64,000 nt of DNA, from NCBI GenBank assembly GCA_964188305.1, contig OZ076895.1. One strand, 5' to 3'. Made by a program: the position numbers and the translations under genes. This document shows, piece by piece, positions 3,557 to 57,538 of the stretch; positions within the stretch are counted from its first letter, which is position 1; every line of letters starts with the position of its first letter. The notes below the pieces were generated by a model. The model was not told the origin of the DNA, did not search any database, and saw nothing but the letters and a program-made list of their open reading frames with translations. Source of the stretch: Podarcis bocagei (taxonomy: Eukaryota).

Positions 3557-3697
3557 CAAAAGGCAGAGACATTACATTGTTGACAAAGATCCGTATAGTT
3601 AAAGCTATGGTTTTCCCAGTAGTGATGTGTGGAAGTGAGAGCTGGACCACAAAGAAGGCTGATCGCCGGAGAATTGATGTTTTTGAATTGTGGTGTC
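3557..3697 (+). mobile_element. BovB (RTE clade) LINE internal fragment
   Basis: Translates to RDITLLTKIRIVKAMVFPVVMCGSESWTTKKADRRRIDVFELWC, the BovB ORF C-terminal region. Confidence 0.88.
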
Positions 3698-8832: not shown

Positions 8833-11061
8833 TTTTTTCTTTTCTTTTTTTTAAAAAAATATTTATTAAAGTTTCACAAATTATACAGACAAACACAACA
8901 ATACAAATAAACACAAAAAACAAGTATAATTTCAAACCCTTATTTTCTTATAACTTACTTCTCCGACCTCCTCATACCTCCCCTTTCTGCATTCCAATTG
9001 CAAATTTTAATTCAGCAAATCCTCACCCTTAAATTTATCTAATTTTTAACCTTTCTTTTCTTTTAACTTAATCCTTACAACTGTAATCCACTTAATTTCT
9101 AAACCAGCATCATTCTAACATTCATTAATTTTGCAATGTTTCTTAAGATAGTTCTTAAATTTCTTCCAATCTTCTTCCGCCGTCTCTTTTCCCTGGTCTC
9201 GGATTCTGCCGGTCATTTCTGCCAGTCCCATATAGTCTATCACCTTCATCTGCCATTCTTCCAAGGTGGGTAGATCTTGTGTCTTCCAATACTTTGCGAT
9301 GAGTATTCTTGCTGCTCTTGTAGCATACATAAAAAATGTTCTGTCTTTCTTTAACACCAATTGGCCGGCCATGCCCAGGAGAAAGGCCTCTGGTTTCTTA
9401 AGAAAGGTATATTTAAATACCTTTTTCATTTCATTATATATCATTTCCCAGAAAGCCTTAATCTTTGGGCACGTCCACCAAAGGTGAAAGAAGGTACCTT
9501 CAATCTCTTTACATTTCCAACATTTGTTATCAGGCAAGTGGTAGATTTTTGCAAGCTTGACTGGGGTCATGTACCACCTATAAATCATTTTCATAATATT
9601 TTCTTTTAAGGCATTACATGCCGTAAATTTCATACCGGTGGTCCACAACTGTTCCCAGTCAGCAAATATAATGTTATGACCAATATCTTGTGCCCACTTA
9701 ATCATAGCTGATTTAACTGTTTCATCCTGCGTATTCCATTTCAACAGCAAGTTATACATCTTTGACAAATTCTTAGTTTTGGATTCCAACAACTCTGTTT
9801 CTAATTTTGACTTTTCCACCTGGAAGCCAATTTTCCTGTCCAATTTATAAACCTCCATTATCTGATAATAATGAAGCCAGTCTCTTACTTTGTCTTTCAA
9901 TTTTTCAAAACTCTGCAATTTAAATTTGTCTCCTTCTTGTTCCAGAATTTCCCAATATTTCGGCCATTTGGCCTCCATATTGAGCTTTTTCAAAGCTTTC
10001 GCTTCCATCGGTGATAACCACCTTGGGGTTTTATTTTCCAATAAATCCTTATATCTTATCCAAACATTAAACAATGCTTTCCTTACAATATGATTTTTAA
10101 ATGCTTTATGTGCTTTGTCCTTATCATACCATAAATATGCATGCCATCCAAATACATTGTTAAAACCTTCTAAATCCAAAATGTCTGTATTTTCAAGAAG
10201 TAGCCACTCTTTCAACCAGCAGAAAGCTGCTGATTCATAGTAAAGTTTTAAGTCTGGCAGGGCAAATCCACCTCTTTCCTTTGCATCAGTTAATATCTTA
10301 AATTTTATTCTAGGTTTCTTGCCCTGCCAGACAAATCTGGAAATGTCTCTCTGCCACTTCTTGAAACAATCCATCTTGTCCACAATTTGCAATGTTTGAA
10401 ATAGAAGCAACATTCTAGGCAATACATTCATTTTAATCATAGCAATACGGCCTAACAATGAAAGTTTCAAGTTTGACCATATTTCTAAGTCTTTTTTTAC
10501 TTCTGCCCAGCATTTCTCATAATTATCTTTAAATAGATTCGCATTTTTAGCTGTCATGTTAATCCCCAAGTATTTCACTTTCTTGACCACAGTTAAACCT
10601 GTTTCATTCTGGAACCTCTCCCTTTCAATAGCTGCTAAATTTTTCTCTAATACCTTAGTTTTTAGTTTATTCAATTTAAATCCTGCGACTTGACCAAACT
10701 CTTGAATTAATTCTAAAACTCTTTTAGTACTAGAGTCTGGCTCTTGTAATGTAAGTACCAAATCATCTGCAAATGCTCTCAATTTGTACTGTTTTACTCC
10801 GACCTGTACACCTTTAACTAGCTGGTCCTTTCTAATCATGTTCAGCAAAACCTCCAGGACCGATATAAAAAGCAATAGGGAAATTGGGCACCCCTGTCGT
10901 GTCCCTTTTTCTATTTTAAATTCTTCTGTAACCACATTATTTACAATTAGCTTAGCCTTTTGCTCAGAGTATATTGCACCTATACCATTCTCAAAGCCTT
11001 GGCCTACCCCCATCCCATGTAGATTCTTCTTCATAAAACTCCAAGAGATGTTGTCAAAAGC
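8833..11061 (-). mobile_element. 5'-truncated L1-clade LINE with a 20-bp TSD
   Basis: TSD ttgggcaagttctgttttct at 8813-8832 and 11062-11081. AATAAA and an A-rich tail on the minus strand. Truncated inside the RT domain (AFDNISWSF at the 5' junction). Confidence 0.95.
9115..11034 (-). CDS. L1-clade ORF2 remnant (partial RT plus C-terminal CCHC region), 639 aa, uninterrupted
   Basis: GTRQGCPIS, FADD, KYLG, LSLLGRI, GGFALPD and CWKC-x8-H-x4-C motifs. The endonuclease and the start of the RT are missing. Confidence 0.92.
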   Translation of the reverse strand: MKKNLHGMGVGQGFENGIGAIYSEQKAKLIVNNVVTEEFKIEKGTRQGCPISLLLFISVLEVLLNMIRKDQLVKGVQVGVKQYKLRAFADDLVLTLQEPDSSTKRVLELIQEFGQVAGFKLNKLKTKVLEKNLAAIERERFQNETGLTVVKKVKYLGINMTAKNANLFKDNYEKCWAEVKKDLEIWSNLKLSLLGRIAMIKMNVLPRMLLLFQTLQIVDKMDCFKKWQRDISRFVWQGKKPRIKFKILTDAKERGGFALPDLKLYYESAAFCWLKEWLLLENTDILDLEGFNNVFGWHAYLWYDKDKAHKAFKNHIVRKALFNVWIRYKDLLENKTPRWLSPMEAKALKKLNMEAKWPKYWEILEQEGDKFKLQSFEKLKDKVRDWLHYYQIMEVYKLDRKIGFQVEKSKLETELLESKTKNLSKMYNLLLKWNTQDETVKSAMIKWAQDIGHNIIFADWEQLWTTGMKFTACNALKENIMKMIYRWYMTPVKLAKIYHLPDNKCWKCKEIEGTFFHLWWTCPKIKAFWEMIYNEMKKVFKYTFLKKPEAFLLGMAGQLVLKKDRTFFMYATRAARILIAKYWKTQDLPTLEEWQMKVIDYMGLAEMTGRIRDQGKETAEEDWKKFKNYLKKHCKINEC

Positions 11062-30365: not shown

Positions 30366-30776
30366 GTTGTTGTTGTTTAGTCGTTTAGTCGTATCTGACT
30401 CTTCGTGACCCCATGGAACAGAGCACGCCAGGCACTCCTGTCTTCTACTGCCTCCCACAGTTTGGTCAGGCTCATGTTTGTAGCTTCGAGAACACTGTCC
30501 AGCCATCTCGTCCTCTGTCGTCCCCTTCTCCTTGTGCCCTCCATCTTTCCCAACATCAGGGTCTTTTCCAGGCAGTCTTCTCTTCTCATGAGGTGGCCAA
30601 AGTATTGGAGCCTCAGCTTCAGGATCTATCTTCCAGTGAGCACTCAGGGCTGATTTCCTTAAGAATGGAGAGGTTTGATCTTCTTGCAGTCCATGGGACT
30701 CTCAAGAGTCTCCTCCAACACCATAATTCAAAAGCATCAATTCTTCAGCGATCAGCCTTCTTTATGGTCCAGCTCT
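30366..30776 (-). mobile_element. BovB LINE 3' end with a (CAA)n tail
   Basis: ORF MRREDCLEKTLMLGKMEGTRRRGRQRTRWLD...WRALFHGVTKSQIRLND; (GTT)n on the plus strand. Confidence 0.93.
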
Positions 30777-30784
30777 TTATGGTC

Positions 30785-30979
30785 GCCTTCATGGATCACT
30801 GCCTTGTCGTGGCGAAGGGGCTTGAATAACTCAGAGAAGCTATGAGCTACGCCGTGCAGGGCCACCCAAGATGGACAGGTCATCATGGAGAGTTTTGACC
30901 AAACGTGATCCACCTGGAGCAGAAACCGGCAAGCCACTCCAGTATCCCTGCCAAGAAAACTCCATGGACAAAGACAACA

Positions 30980-30983
<4 letters not shown>
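30785..30983 (+). mobile_element. BovB 5'-region segment, inverted relative to the adjacent 3' end
   Basis: cactgccttgtcgtggcgaaggggcttg...gggccacccaagatggacaggtcat...ccactccagtatccctgccaagaaaactccatgga. Confidence 0.8.

Positions 30984-31032
<49 letters not shown>
30983..31032. repeat. (TA)n microsatellite, left flank of the Penelope-like element
   Basis: Seen directly; a matching (TA)n lies at ~31924-31945. Confidence 0.97.
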
Positions 31033-31034
<2 letters not shown>

Positions 31035-31110
31035 CTTTCGTAGATTTTCACGGGTACAGGAATGCAGGTTTTGGTGTCTTCGGGTGTCTTCCCGTGTAAG
31101 AGTTGGGGTG

Positions 31111-31160
31111 TCTAGGCGACGTTTCGACGAGGTCTCACTCGTCATCTTCAGGCTGGTGCT
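31111..31160 (-). ncRNA. Minimal type I hammerhead ribozyme motif, minus-strand copy
   Basis: Exact reverse complement of the copy at 31827-31876. Confidence 0.75.
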
Positions 31161-31826
31161 TTCGGCTTCTTGTTACTAGAACAGAGCAGGATCTCAGTGT
31201 TTGAGTTCCTATAAATACTGTTGAGGGGGTGTGGTGTATAGCCTCCAACGTTCTGGGCAGAGAGGAAGTTCCCAGGTTAATGTGTCTTTTCTTCTTTTGT
31301 TCATTAATTACTTGAGGGATATCTTGAGTGATTACTTGAGTGATATTCTGAGTACCACTTAGGAGGGTCATTAGGTGTGGATTAGTTGCTAAAGCTTTCG
31401 TGTCTTGACCTCTTGACCTTGTGAAGAGTTTTTCTGAGAAGATGGCTGTACTGCACTTAGTTGTGCTCTGGCTTGGCTTCGTGTATAGGGGCGAGCTGTG
31501 GTTTTGTGCCCTGTGCCAGCCAGATCTGTGTAGGGATTGCAGGGGGGTGCAGCATCCGGAGGTGCCACTATGGTTTGGCTACTGGATGGTGTCTGTAATT
31601 TATCTGTGGAGAGGGTCTGGGTTTGGGTCTGGTACTCAGAATATCACTCAAGTAATCACTCAAGATATCCCTCAAGTAATTAATGAACAAAAGAAGAAAA
31701 GACACATTAACCTGGGAACTTCCTCTCTGCCCAGAACGTTGGAGGCTATACACCACACCCCCTCAACAGTATTTATAGGAACTCAAACACTGAGATCCTG
31801 CTCTGTTCTAGTAACAAGAAGCCGAA

Positions 31827-31876
31827 AGCACCAGCCTGAAGATGACGAGTGAGACCTCGTCGAAACGTCGCCTAGA
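31827..31876 (+). ncRNA. Minimal type I hammerhead ribozyme motif, plus-strand copy
   Basis: CTGAAGA (31836-31842), T, stem II GACGAG-tgagac-CTCGTC, then GAAAC and GTC (31862-31869). Palindromic ACGT stands in place of stem III. Confidence 0.75.
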
Positions 31877-33214
31877 CACCCCAACTCTTACACGGGAAGA
31901 CACCCGAAGACACCAAAACCTGCATATATATATATATATATATATGGTTTGATATAATTTTAATCTCCTTCTCACAAACAGGAGAAGAAATGAGAGTTTC
32001 ATAAACACCCTGTGAAGTAAAGCTTGTACAAAAAAATGATAAACAAAATCATCGTGGGACCAAGATCCTTGCCAACATGCTTTCTCTCAGCAACAGCAGA
32101 TGCCAATTTTGAAGAAAATCCCAAAGATTCAAAGGATTTGTATATGCGTATGCATTATCATATTGTTGTTTAGACAAATAGTATGCCTGGTCAAATAATA
32201 TGGGAAAATTAATATTTGCAAATAATTATTGTATGAAAAAGTGCCAGTAATCAAAAGTGATATTATTTGCAAACACTTTTGGGGGAGAGGGAGGACTAGC
32301 TCTGATAAATAGGATAGCAGATGGGTCCAGATTAAATACATGGCTGTAAAATACTCCAGGGACCCGACTTGTTTACGAACAGCAGCTGAACCCTAAGAGT
32401 AAATTTTACCCTGGGAGCCTCCTGTTGTTGAATGTTGTTCTGCTTGCTGGATTTCTTTTTTAGCTAGGTTTTTTTGGGGGGGGGCACAGTGACATTCATT
32501 ATTTTTTGAAAAGTTGGGAATGGCTTTTGTATTGGGAATTGTGTTTCTTTGAATCTGTTTACCTCATGTGGTGTGTTTTTCCTTTTGACACTACAGTGGT
32601 AGGCCTATATCACTTTACTGGCCACTAGTTCAGCACATCTGCCACTTCACCTGCAGAGGATGTAGACGAGTAAACAGAGCTGCATGTCATCAATGTATTG
32701 CTTCAGATACGCATATAATGTGGGTAGAAATAACACGCTAAAGGCCACAGTTCTAGTCCAAGCTGCATTAGGAGCTTTAACACAGCTGAGAAATGCTGAA
32801 AGACCCCACATGCAAACAAATGTAACTTTAAAATATGTGAAATATTCATCTGTTTCTGATTCTTGTGAAATCTGATATTCATAATGCATAAATGAACAAC
32901 AACCATTTATTCATGTTTGCTTTTCTCCTTGCAAGCCTTATTTGTGATGGCTTTTAATATGTATTAATGCCTAAAAGAACAACATTAAGTCATGGAGCAA
33001 CTCAGCTAAGACTTGCTGAAATTGATTAAATAGTTGGATCATCTTATCCCTTTTATTCAAATTGACAGAACGTAGGCCAAATACGCATACCATTGGTTTG
33101 CCCTTTTCGTTATGCTATGGCATGGTGATATACCACCTTGTTATTTATCTGTTCTTTAACGAAAATTGTACTAGGTAATTAGCAATGAAGATATACAGAT
33201 ATTCTGGGGTCTGA

Positions 33215-35513: not shown

Positions 35514-35680
35514 TAGAACAATAGAATAATTGAAGTCTATGGAATTGGAAGTGACTCTGAGGGCCATCTAGTCCAACCCCCTCCAATGCAAGAATTCTGT
35601 CCACAGCCATCCCTGGGTGGGCTTGAACCACCAACTTTCTGGTTATCAGCCAGATGCATTGACCCACTGCGTCACATAAA
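35514..35680 (-). mobile_element. SINE with a tRNA-Asn(GTT)-like head and a CR1 3' tail
   Basis: Reverse complement tgtgacgcagtgggtcaatgcatctggctgataaccagaaagttggtggttcaagcccacccagggatg resembles tRNA-Asn. It is followed by ttcttgcattggagggggttggactagatggccctc. Confidence 0.78.
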
Positions 35681-57223: not shown

Positions 57224-57538
57224 TACCTATCCATTCTTAAGGAAATCAGCCCCGAGTGCTCACTGGAAGGACGGATCATGAAGCTGAGGCTCCAATACTT
57301 TGGCCACCTCATGAGAAGAGAAGACTCCCGGGAAAAGACCCTGATATTGGGAAAGATGGAGGGCACAAGGAGAAGGGGACGACAGAGGACGAGATGGTTG
57401 GATAGTGTTCTTGAAGCTACCAGCATGAGTTTGACCAAACTGCGGGAGGCAGTGGAAGACAGGAGTGCCTGGCGTGCTCTGGTCCATGGGGTCACGAAGA
57501 GTTGGGCACGACTAAGAGACTAAACAACAACAACAACA
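57224..57538 (+). mobile_element. BovB LINE 3' end with a (CAA)n tail
   Basis: ORF MKLRLQYFGHLMRREDSREKTLILGKMEGTRRRGRQRTRWLD...; same family as 30366-30776. Confidence 0.93.

What the first reader, a model, noticed from the sequence alone, without database searches (positions are those of the whole stretch)
31111..31876. A pair of minimal hammerhead ribozyme cores, one on each strand
Seen: CUGAAGA-U-[GACGAG ugagac CUCGUC]-GAAAC-GUC at 31836-31869 (+) and its mirror at 31118-31151 (-). The catalytic core and a 6-bp stem II are intact. Stem III is reduced to the palindrome ACGU, and stem I is only about 2 bp (GC/GC). A CACGGG...CCCGTG pairing closes the element's 3' end. Established: PLE pseudo-LTRs carry minimal type I hammerheads thought to cleave as dimers. 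Inference: cleavage would fall after GUC (31869 / 31118). Because the copies are inverted, a transcript from either direction carries one sense ribozyme plus its antisense, so cleavage would need a partner in trans. No RT or GIY-YIG coding sequence is present, so this may be a non-autonomous, retrozyme-like unit. This is my best candidate for an undescribed system here, although the motif class itself is known.
Basis: partly seen in the sequence, partly recalled or inferred. Interest (0 to 1): 0.8.

Follow-up and report, generated by a model that had tools for sequence, protein, structure and literature searches.

The report
Head-to-head truncated Penelope retroelement insertion
The two hammerhead ribozyme motifs are real, but they are the normal ribozyme of a very abundant Penelope-like retrotransposon that landed in a (TA)n repeat as two truncated copies joined head to head, a layout already described for these elements, so the finding is ordinary.

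Summary
An identical 34-nt minimal hammerhead (CUGAAGA-U-6 bp stem II-GAAAC-GUC) lies at 31836-31869 (+) and 31151-31118 (-). The two motifs are one event, because both lie in a perfect 296-nt inverted repeat (31062-31357 / 31630-31925).

The structure is a young insertion of a Poseidon-type Penelope-like element (PLE) into a (TA)n microsatellite.
- A 572-nt 5'-truncated copy lies on the - strand, with a 28-nt 'tail'.
- A 296-nt copy lies on the + strand. The two are joined head to head at a 4-nt microhomology.
- The ribozyme straddles the element's ATG, as in the Anolis element PAc. The two outer ends fall 84 and 112 nt into the ORF; PAc starts reverse transcription 111-118 nt in, and its tail lies between two start sites.
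- Public reads show a family thousands-fold deeper than single-copy flank, transcribed, ending in (TA)n, and continuing 5' beyond the truncation point.
- No read pile-up marks the cleavage site.

A retrozyme-like, non-autonomous or undescribed system is not supported. This locus keeps the ORF's last 81 and first 28-37 codons and has no direct repeats. The scan flagged at least six similar palindromic Penelope insertions elsewhere in this genome. Interest is low.

The parts
30983..31033 (.). (AT)25.5, left part of the target microsatellite
   Evidence: Tandem Repeats Finder. Loose ends 'before 31062' in three runs read (TA)n, so the family usually sits in (TA)n.
31034..31061 (-). 28-nt 'tail' extending the - strand copy from +85 to +112 of the ORF. 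It carries CCCGUG, which pairs with CACGGG in the arm to close an AC-rich stem-loop.
   Evidence: It is present at one end only, as described for PLE tails (PMC8557442, PMC11167929).
31062..31633 (-). Long 5'-truncated PLE copy (572 nt): ORF tail, pLTR-like stretch, hammerhead with ATG, and first 28 codons
   Evidence: A loose end 'behind 31633' with one shared consensus appears in all four runs, so the parent runs on from left arm through spacer and beyond.
31392..31633 (-). Last ~81 codons of the PLE ORF (frame open, polar tail). The stop TAG follows at 31391-31389.
   Evidence: By eye, the stop region resembles the Poseidon_Ac stop/pLTR junction.
31152..31388 (-). pLTR-like non-coding stretch with 12-nt tandem repeats and a TATTTATA box. 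The same stretch lies at 31599-31835 on the + strand, as arm sequence from 31630.
   Evidence: Its position matches the 126-nt pLTR of Poseidon_Ac.
31118..31151 (-). Minimal hammerhead of the long copy. ATG at 31145-31143, TGA in loop II at 31137-31135, predicted cut between 31118 and 31117.
31630..31633 (.). TGGT, a 4-nt microhomology at the head-to-head junction. It is complementary to ACCA at 31354-31357.
   Evidence: The inverted repeat starts at 31630, while family reads fit through 31633. Sequence.
31630..31925 (+). Short 5'-truncated PLE copy (296 nt), ending at +84 of the ORF without a tail
31836..31869 (+). Minimal hammerhead of the short copy. ATG at 31842-31844 (A9, extra U, G10.1), TGA in loop II at 31850-31852, predicted cut after 31869.
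31924..31945 (.). (AT)11, right part of the target microsatellite

Best explanation
This is a young, dead-on-arrival insertion of a Poseidon/Penelope-clade Penelope-like retrotransposon into a (TA)n microsatellite.

Two 5'-truncated cDNA copies of the same element lie head to head, with their 3' ends facing outward. The long copy is on the - strand (31633 to 31062, plus a 28-nt tail to 31034). The short copy is on the + strand (31630 to 31925).

The hammerhead is the family's own ribozyme. It sits at the pLTR-ORF junction, and the start codon is formed by A9, the extra U and G10.1.

The mechanism is inferred. The element's protein cut both strands of the AT-rich target. Each strand primed reverse transcription at one of the two internal start sites, +84 and +112 of the ORF. 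The 3' ends of the two cDNAs then annealed through TGGT/ACCA and primed each other's second strand. That would give perfectly identical arms around a unique 272-nt spacer.

At this locus the ribozymes are passive cargo. Each copy lacks the ORF, and also the region up to +172 that the Anolis enzyme needs in its template. In a read-through RNA the ribozyme would be locked inside a 296-bp duplex.
For: Shown here:
- Exact motif and perfect inverted repeat.
- (AT)n on both sides and a 28-nt non-repeat tail on one side only.
- Copy ends at +84 and +112 from the ATG.
- In a run of the window's own species (its contig matches the unique right flank 100%), summed word depth over the element is 2.6e5-1.4e6, against 98 on that flank. 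The family is therefore highly repeated.
- A loose end behind 31633 with one consensus in four runs. It continues the - strand frame open, so the parent runs from the left arm through the spacer and further 5'.
- Loose ends before 31062 read (TA)n.
- Strand-biased RNA reads over the element (27-41 against 4-12 across the spacer).

From papers:
- Minimal hammerheads in PLE pLTRs have a long helix II, an unpaired nucleotide 5' of it, a palindromic 15.2-16.2, and occur in opposite-strand pairs 100-700 bp apart (PMC4209133).
- Inverted 5'-truncated copies, a 30-40 bp one-sided tail, and (TA)n targets (PMC8557442).
- In Anolis PAc the ORF starts at stem II and the cut is 26 nt after the ATG. Reverse transcription starts at two internal sites, with the main one 111-118 nt into the ORF in an AC-rich stem-loop, and the tail lies between them. 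The protein cuts and extends both strands (PMC11167929).
- The Poseidon_Ac consensus has the same layout: CUGAGGA-U-G...C-GAAAC-GUC. Its stem II differs from this one by three double changes and one single change among 6 pairs, and pairing is kept.
Against: - No RT or GIY-YIG domain is in this locus. I could not fetch a full-length family copy, so the family's autonomy rests on three things: the open frame 5' of the truncation point, by-eye similarity to Poseidon_Ac, and an unchecked earlier scan note of an intact PLE in this genome.
- The comparison with Poseidon_Ac was by eye only.
- The twin-priming and mutual-priming steps are inference from one locus.
- Stem-loop and monomer folds are not more stable than shuffles (z -1.0 to -1.5).
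- The canonical dimer fold (-20.3 kcal/mol) is not the predicted optimum (-29.4 kcal/mol).
- No RNA ends pile up at the cut site.
Confidence: 0.8

Rival explanations
1. Same PLE insertion, but made by a single priming event followed by snap-back. The 3' end of the first cDNA (TGGT, 31630-31633) folded back onto ACCA (31354-31357) of the same strand, and the enzyme copied the cDNA back to its own 5' end.
For: The 4-nt complementarity sits exactly where it is needed, and the arms are 100% identical.
Against: Snap-back copying should reproduce the 28-nt tail at the right end. The right arm stops exactly at the tail-less site, +84, and is followed by (AT)n. PAc extends both strands in vitro (PMC11167929).
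Confidence: 0.12
2. A dedicated non-autonomous, retrozyme-like element that is mobilised in trans and processed by its hammerheads, possibly through circular RNA.
For: There is no RT or EN at the locus. The family is transcribed. Animal retrozymes are reported to derive from PLE pLTRs (bioRxiv 10.64898/2026.07.22.740005).
Against: - There is no direct tandem repeat, only an inverted one.
- The hammerhead is the minimal PLE type, not the canonical type I of retrozymes (PMC7229834).
- The piece keeps ORF ends.
- Family copies run on 5' in an open frame.
- Each copy ends at +84 or +112, short of the +172 the PAc enzyme needs in a template.
- Among the joints listed for the RNA run, none lies in the element; 50 further joints were not shown.
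Confidence: 0.05
3. An assembly artefact: a fold-back chimera of long reads created the palindrome.
For: The 296-nt arms are perfect. PLE inverted structures are known to trouble assemblies (PMC8557442).
Against: The structure has biological detail that an artefact would not produce: a unique 272-nt spacer that is parent sequence, different termini at the two ends, a microhomology junction, and (AT)n on both sides. A run of the same species holds 95% of the sampled words.
Confidence: 0.02
4. A fold-back or MITE-type DNA transposon in which the hammerhead-like core is a chance match.
For: Terminal inverted repeats, and a TA-rich target that hides any target-site duplication.
Against: - Chance expectation is 0.01 per window.
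- The motif has features no descriptor asked for that are typical of PLE hammerheads: the extra U, G10.1-C11.1, the ACGU palindrome, and the ATG.
- Family reads leave the inner arm boundary into other sequence.
- One end has an extra 28 nt.
Confidence: 0.01

Closest known systems
Poseidon_Ac (PAc), the Penelope-like element of Anolis carolinensis (Frangieh et al. 2024, PMC11167929; consensus in its File S1)
   Same: - The hammerhead lies at the pLTR-ORF junction, with the ATG made of A9, the extra U and G10.1.
- GAAAC-GUC with no helix III loop.
- The cut is 25 nt after the ATG here, against 26 in PAc.
- Stem II is 6 bp.
- Copy ends lie inside the ORF start. Here they are at +84 and +112; in PAc the main start site is at 111-118 and the tail lies between two start sites.
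- An AC-rich stem-loop at those ends, and an AT-rich target.
- By eye, similar sequence at the ORF stop/pLTR start and around the CCCGAA(A)GACA block.
   Different: - Stem II sequence is almost entirely different (GACGAG/CUCGUC against GCCUGC/GUGGGC).
- Helix I is 2 bp against 3 bp.
- The pLTR-like stretch is about 237 nt against 126 nt and carries 12-nt tandem repeats.
- The ORF N-terminus is not alike at the protein level until the tail region.
- This locus is a truncated inverted pair, not a tandem full-length copy.
Minimal hammerheads of metazoan PLEs (Cervera and De la Pena 2014, PMC4209133)
   Same: [quoted passage not shown] The paper also reports pairs on opposite strands 100-700 bp apart. 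Here the two motifs are separated by 684 nt (31152-31835).
   Different: Helix I here is 2 bp, as in the D. virilis variant, rather than the 4-5 bp of the Schistosoma families.
Non-LTR retrozymes of animals (Cervera and de la Pena 2020, PMC7229834; Li et al. 2026 preprint)
   Same: A short, non-coding-looking piece with a type I hammerhead, related to PLE pLTRs.
   Different: Retrozymes are direct tandem repeats with canonical hammerheads (helix I about 6 bp, loop-loop contacts) that yield circular RNAs. This locus is an inverted pair of ORF-end fragments with minimal hammerheads.
Penelope of Drosophila virilis and the general PLE insertion architecture (Craig et al. 2021, PMC8557442)
   Same: An inverted 5'-truncated copy next to another copy, a one-sided 30-40 bp tail (28 nt here), and microsatellite (TA)n targets.
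   Different: No full-length ORF copy lies between or beside the inverted pieces. Both pieces are short.

Membership tests
Hammerhead ribozyme, minimal PLE type | Catalytic core CUGANGA ... GAAA ... UH in type I order | tested here: met
   CUGAAGA, GAAA and GUC lie at 31836-31869 (+) and 31151-31118 (-).
Hammerhead ribozyme, minimal PLE type | Helix II closed by G10.1-C11.1, with an unpaired nucleotide between A9 and 10.1 | tested here: met
   6-bp GACGAG/CUCGUC stem with the extra U at 31843. The stem forms in every fold.
Hammerhead ribozyme, minimal PLE type | Palindromic 15.2-16.2 that allows a dimeric helix III | tested here: met
   ACGU is present. The forced dimer fold scores -20.3 kcal/mol, which is not the predicted optimum of -29.4.
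Hammerhead ribozyme, minimal PLE type | Helix I of several base pairs | tested here: inconclusive
   Only 2 contiguous pairs (G31870-C31835, C31871-G31834). The same number is reported for the D. virilis variant.
Hammerhead ribozyme, minimal PLE type | Match to curated hammerhead covariance models | tested here: not met
   No Rfam hammerhead hit at gathering score or at E up to 10. The models require helices that this variant lacks.
Hammerhead ribozyme, minimal PLE type | Self-cleavage after H17 | not testable with these tools
   RNA reads show no place where many molecules begin or end. PAc cleaves only with its protein present, and public reads show no ends at its site either.
Hammerhead ribozyme, minimal PLE type | Helix II pairing kept through compensatory change among relatives | tested here: met
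   Compared by eye with Poseidon_Ac: three double changes and one single change in 6 pairs, all still pairing. This rests on two sequences only. None of the 40 listed variants (of 90; 50 not shown) falls between 31101 and 31177 in family reads.
Penelope-like element insertion | ORF with RT and GIY-YIG endonuclease | tested here: not met
   This truncated locus has no Pfam domain in either ORF across the spacer. For the family as a whole it is not testable here, because no lizard genome collection is on hand. The frame stays open 5' of the truncation point in family reads.
Penelope-like element insertion | Hammerhead at the pLTR-ORF junction | tested here: met
   The ATG lies inside the ribozyme. 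An ORF stop and a pLTR-like stretch lie upstream. The layout matches Poseidon_Ac.
Penelope-like element insertion | Variable 5' truncation with tandem or inverted partial copies | tested here: met
   Copies of 572 nt and 296 nt lie head to head.
Penelope-like element insertion | Optional 30-40 bp tail at one end, lying between two internal RT start sites | tested here: met
   A 28-nt tail lies at 31034-31061 only. The copy ends are at +84 and +112. Most family copies end at 31062 directly next to (TA)n.
Penelope-like element insertion | AT-rich or (TA)n target | tested here: met
   (AT)25.5 and (AT)11 flank the insertion.
Non-LTR retrozyme | Direct tandem repeats, each unit carrying a hammerhead | tested here: not met
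   No direct repeat of the unit exists in the locus or the window.
Non-LTR retrozyme | Canonical type I hammerhead with a 6-bp helix I and loop contacts | tested here: not met
   Helix I is 2 bp, and no Rfam Hammerhead_1 hit was found.
Non-LTR retrozyme | Circular RNA products | tested here: inconclusive
   None of the joints listed for the raw RNA run lies in the element, and 50 joints were not shown. Only one run was read, at about 12% of its reads.
Fold-back / MITE DNA transposon | Fixed unit bounded by TIRs with a target-site duplication | tested here: not met
   Family reads leave the inner arm boundary into further parent sequence. The two ends are unequal, with a tail on one side. A duplication cannot be read inside (TA)n.

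The most novel reading that the evidence does not exclude
Palindromic PLE insertions like this one are not only scars. When transcribed through, their perfect 296-bp hairpin would be a substrate for small-RNA or editing pathways. Thousands of such hairpins could then form a self-made silencing trigger against the active Penelope family. Separately, the unequal ends (+84 and +112) together with the 4-nt junction are a sequence-level signature of twin-strand priming, which could be counted genome-wide to test how PLEs integrate.
Probability: 0.12. Interest if true: 0.4.

Novelty: new member of a known kind. Interest (0 to 1): 0.12.

Why it matters
It matters little as a discovery. The ribozyme class, its place over the start codon, the one-sided tail, the (TA)n target and the inverted truncated copies are all published for Penelope-like elements, and the scan has met the same layout repeatedly in this genome.

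The locus has modest value as a clean natural example. Its two ends use the two different internal start sites of reverse transcription, and its inner junction shows a 4-nt microhomology. This fits the in vitro finding that the Anolis enzyme cuts and extends both DNA strands. It also suggests a simple genome-wide count that could test how these elements complete integration.

Tried and rejected
- **Rfam.** Searches at gathering score over the whole window and at E up to 10 over 31000-32000 gave no hammerhead family. Only AT-repeat noise and one tRNA-like hit elsewhere appeared.
- **Gapped DNA search pattern.** I replaced it with a script.
- **Other copies in the window.** None found.
- **Pfam.** Neither ORF that crosses the spacer has a domain.
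- **HMMER search of 1.84 billion representatives.** I ran this with the 147-aa - strand ORF and later saw that its first 52 residues are in the wrong frame for this copy. The search returned only one protein, P0001. It is a translin-family gene model ending in an exonised fragment of this family, not a PLE parent. Its encoding contig is not on record.
- **The search for homologous proteins.** Not run. Only one hit for a family with thousands of genomic copies shows that lizard repeat ORFs are hardly present in that collection. The tool's length window would also exclude a full-length PLE protein when the query is an 81-aa piece.
- **Computed alignment to Poseidon_Ac.** Left out. It was compared by eye only.
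- **Earlier findings.** Look-ups by sequence and by two word sets gave nothing further.
- **Thermodynamic support.** Folds give no special support for the 3' stem-loop or for the hammerhead dimer.
- **ARAGORN.** It does not confirm the Rfam tRNA hit at 35614-35674.

Full report
**Observation**

CTGAAGA-T-GACGAG-TGAGAC-CTCGTC-GAAAC-GTC lies at 31836-31869 on the + strand, and its reverse complement lies at 31151-31118. A script that looks for CTGANGA, an optional extra base, a hairpin and GAAA on both strands finds only these two places in 64 kb. Two hundred first-order shuffles of the window give 0.095 such hits with a stem of 4 bp or more, and 0.01 with 6 bp or more.

Helix I is 2 bp, and helix III is only the palindrome ACGU. 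Rfam has no match, either at gathering score or at E up to 10. That is expected for a motif without helices I and III.

The two motifs are not independent. They belong to a 296-nt inverted repeat, 31062-31357 and 31630-31925, that is 100% complementary around a 272-nt spacer.

**Anatomy**

(AT)25.5 lies at 30983-31033 and (AT)11 at 31924-31945. Between the left (AT)n and the left arm there are 28 non-repeat bases (31034-31061). Nothing comparable lies on the right.

In each arm the ribozyme reads outward. A9, the extra U and G10.1 spell ATG (31842-31844; mirrored at 31145-31143). From that ATG an open frame runs to the end of the arm, 84 nt (28 codons) on the right. On the left, with the 28 extra bases, it runs 112 nt (37 codons).

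Upstream of the ribozyme on the - strand, one frame is open from the inner junction to a TAG at 31391-31389 (81 codons, polar). About 237 nt follow with stops in that frame. They include 12-nt tandem repeats and a TATTTATA box.

**Evidence from public reads**

Run X1 is from the window's own species: a 1541-nt contig matches the unique right flank 31955-32300 without a difference, at depth 98. In that run the summed word depth over the element is 2.6e5 to 1.4e6. The tool warns that this is not a copy number, but a ratio of thousands shows a very abundant family.

In all four runs, records that fit the spacer up to 31633 then leave the window sequence with one shared consensus. So the parent element runs from the left arm through the spacer and beyond. 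The long copy is therefore on the - strand (31633 to 31062). The short copy is the right arm.

Read on the - strand, the loose consensus keeps the ORF frame open. Because the inverted repeat begins at 31630, the bases TGGT (31630-31633) fit both copies. This is a 4-nt microhomology, complementary to ACCA at 31354-31357.

Records that end at 31062 are preceded by (TA)n in three runs. The family therefore normally ends there and sits in (TA)n, and the 28-nt extension is optional.

A raw RNA run of a related species covers the element with a strand bias: 27-41 against 4-12 over the spacer. If the library is of the usual dUTP kind, that is the sense strand of the long copy. No place shows a pile-up of read starts or ends, so nothing marks the predicted cut site.

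Among the 40 best supported differences (50 more were not shown), none falls between 31101 and 31177, which contains the ribozyme.

**Comparison with the literature**

Cervera and De la Pena (PMC4209133) defined minimal hammerheads in the pseudo-LTRs of Penelope-like elements. These have a long helix II, an unpaired base between positions 9 and 10.1, G10.1-C11.1, and a palindromic 15.2-16.2. Their activity as dimers is low. They also occur as pairs on opposite strands 100-700 bp apart, ascribed to truncated elements.

Craig et al. (PMC8557442) describe three features of PLE insertions: an inverted 5'-truncated copy next to PLE insertions, a 30-40 bp tail at one end, and (TA)n targets.

Frangieh et al. 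(PMC11167929) studied the Anolis element PAc and reported the following.
- The ORF starts at stem II, and the cut lies 26 nt after the ATG.
- Reverse transcription starts at two internal sites. The most common start is in an AC-rich stem-loop 111-118 nt into the ORF, and the tail lies between the two sites.
- The protein cuts and extends both DNA strands.
- The template RNA needs the first 172 nt of the ORF.
- The ribozyme cleaves only with protein present and is not needed for insertion.
- Public RNA reads show no ends at the cut site.

The Poseidon_Ac consensus printed in that paper's supplement ends ...CTGAGG and begins ATGCCTGCC...GGGCGAAACGTCAGG. This is the same layout as here. Its stem II, GCCUGC/GUGGGC, differs from GACGAG/CUCGUC by three double changes and one single change in six pairs, and pairing is kept.

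By eye, three other blocks also resemble each other: the stop codon/pLTR start (AAGCTTT..CAA..CTAAT), the CCCGAA(A)GACA block, and the GAAA..CT.CGA block at the tail.

**Interpretation**

Everything fits one young insertion of a Poseidon-type PLE. It consists of two 5'-truncated copies head to head in a (TA)n tract. One outer end is at the tail-less start site (+84) and the other at the tailed site (+112).

I infer that both strands of the target were cut and each primed a cDNA. The two cDNA 3' ends then annealed through TGGT/ACCA and served as each other's second-strand template. That would explain the identical arms, the unique spacer and the unequal ends.

A single priming followed by snap-back is the main alternative for this step. 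It predicts that the tail would be mirrored at the right end, which is not seen.

**Status of the ribozymes at this locus**

The ribozymes here are cargo. Neither copy has the ORF or reaches +172. A transcript through the whole element would fold into a 296-bp duplex (-693 kcal/mol, z -47). The canonical dimer fold is not the predicted optimum (-20.3 against -29.4 kcal/mol).

**Why not a retrozyme-like or new system**

- There are no direct repeats.
- The hammerhead is the minimal PLE type, not the canonical type I of animal retrozymes (PMC7229834; preprint 10.64898/2026.07.22.740005).
- The piece carries both ends of an ORF.
- Family members continue 5'.

What I could not show is the RT/GIY-YIG part of the family itself. 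No lizard genome collection is on hand. The one large protein search found only P0001, a translin-family gene model whose last 95 residues are 92% identical to the - strand frame that ends at the TGA in loop II.

**Earlier notes of this scan (unchecked AI notes)**

- The notes say the genome is a lacertid lizard.
- They say an intact PLE elsewhere in it has an ORF that starts in one hammerhead and ends in the next.
- At least six other palindromic Penelope insertions with a hammerhead on each strand were flagged on other pieces.

My data agree in part with the second note. A one-base difference in family reads (an extra T after 31418 or 31428) joins the ORF frame to the frame that stays open up to the TGA at 31137-31135, and P0001 shows that joined reading. 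This copy stops earlier, at the TAG.

**Verdict**

The link to PLE hammerheads is right. The proposal of an undescribed non-autonomous system is not supported. This is an ordinary member of a known kind, and interest is low.

Noticed in passing
window 31389-31430 (- strand), and family reads: Family copies differ by one base here. An extra T after 31418 appears in 25 of 28 RNA reads of a related species. An extra T after 31428 accounts for about 11% of depth in the window's species. The extra base would join the ORF frame to the frame that stays open through the pLTR to the TGA in hammerhead loop II. In those copies the ORF of one unit would therefore end 8 nt after the ATG of the next. This copy stops at TAG 31391-31389 instead.
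   Followed up: partly
P0001: A 268-aa predicted protein has a Translin-family N-terminal part (Pfam E 1.4e-28). Its C-terminal 95 residues are 92% identical to the - strand frame of this element and end at the TGA inside the hammerhead. It looks like a gene model whose last exon is an exonised fragment of this Penelope family. Its contig is not on record.
   Followed up: partly
window 30400-30982: The left flank is itself a very abundant repeat, with summed depth 1e6-1e7 and sharp loose ends at 30776/30786 in all runs. A 93% identical inverted copy of 30400-30675 lies at 57225-57500, and a 59-nt piece at 3638-3696. It was not classified.
   Followed up: partly
window 9115-11034 (-): A 639-aa ORF contains the second half of an RT domain (RVT_1, E 2.5e-15) and a C-terminal CWKC...H...C cysteine motif typical of L1 ORF2. 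It is a 5'-truncated L1-type LINE, unrelated to the Penelope piece.
   Followed up: partly
window 35614-35674 (-): Rfam tRNA hit of 37.4 bits that covers model positions 6-65 only. ARAGORN finds no tRNA there. It is probably a tRNA-derived SINE head or a decayed tRNA.
   Followed up: partly
window 31634-31680 and 31307-31353: Three to three and a half copies of a 12-nt unit (ACTCAAGTAATC-like) lie at the inner ends of the arms, in the pLTR-like stretch just 3' of the ORF stop. They help explain why this stretch is about 110 nt longer than the pLTR of the Anolis element.
   Followed up: no
window 31770-31777 (+) and 31210-31217 (-): A TATTTATA box lies 59 nt upstream of the hammerhead core in each arm. 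Poseidon_Ac has an ATATATATTA stretch in the corresponding part of its pLTR. Each arm might therefore fire transcription outward into the flanks. This was not tested.
   Followed up: no
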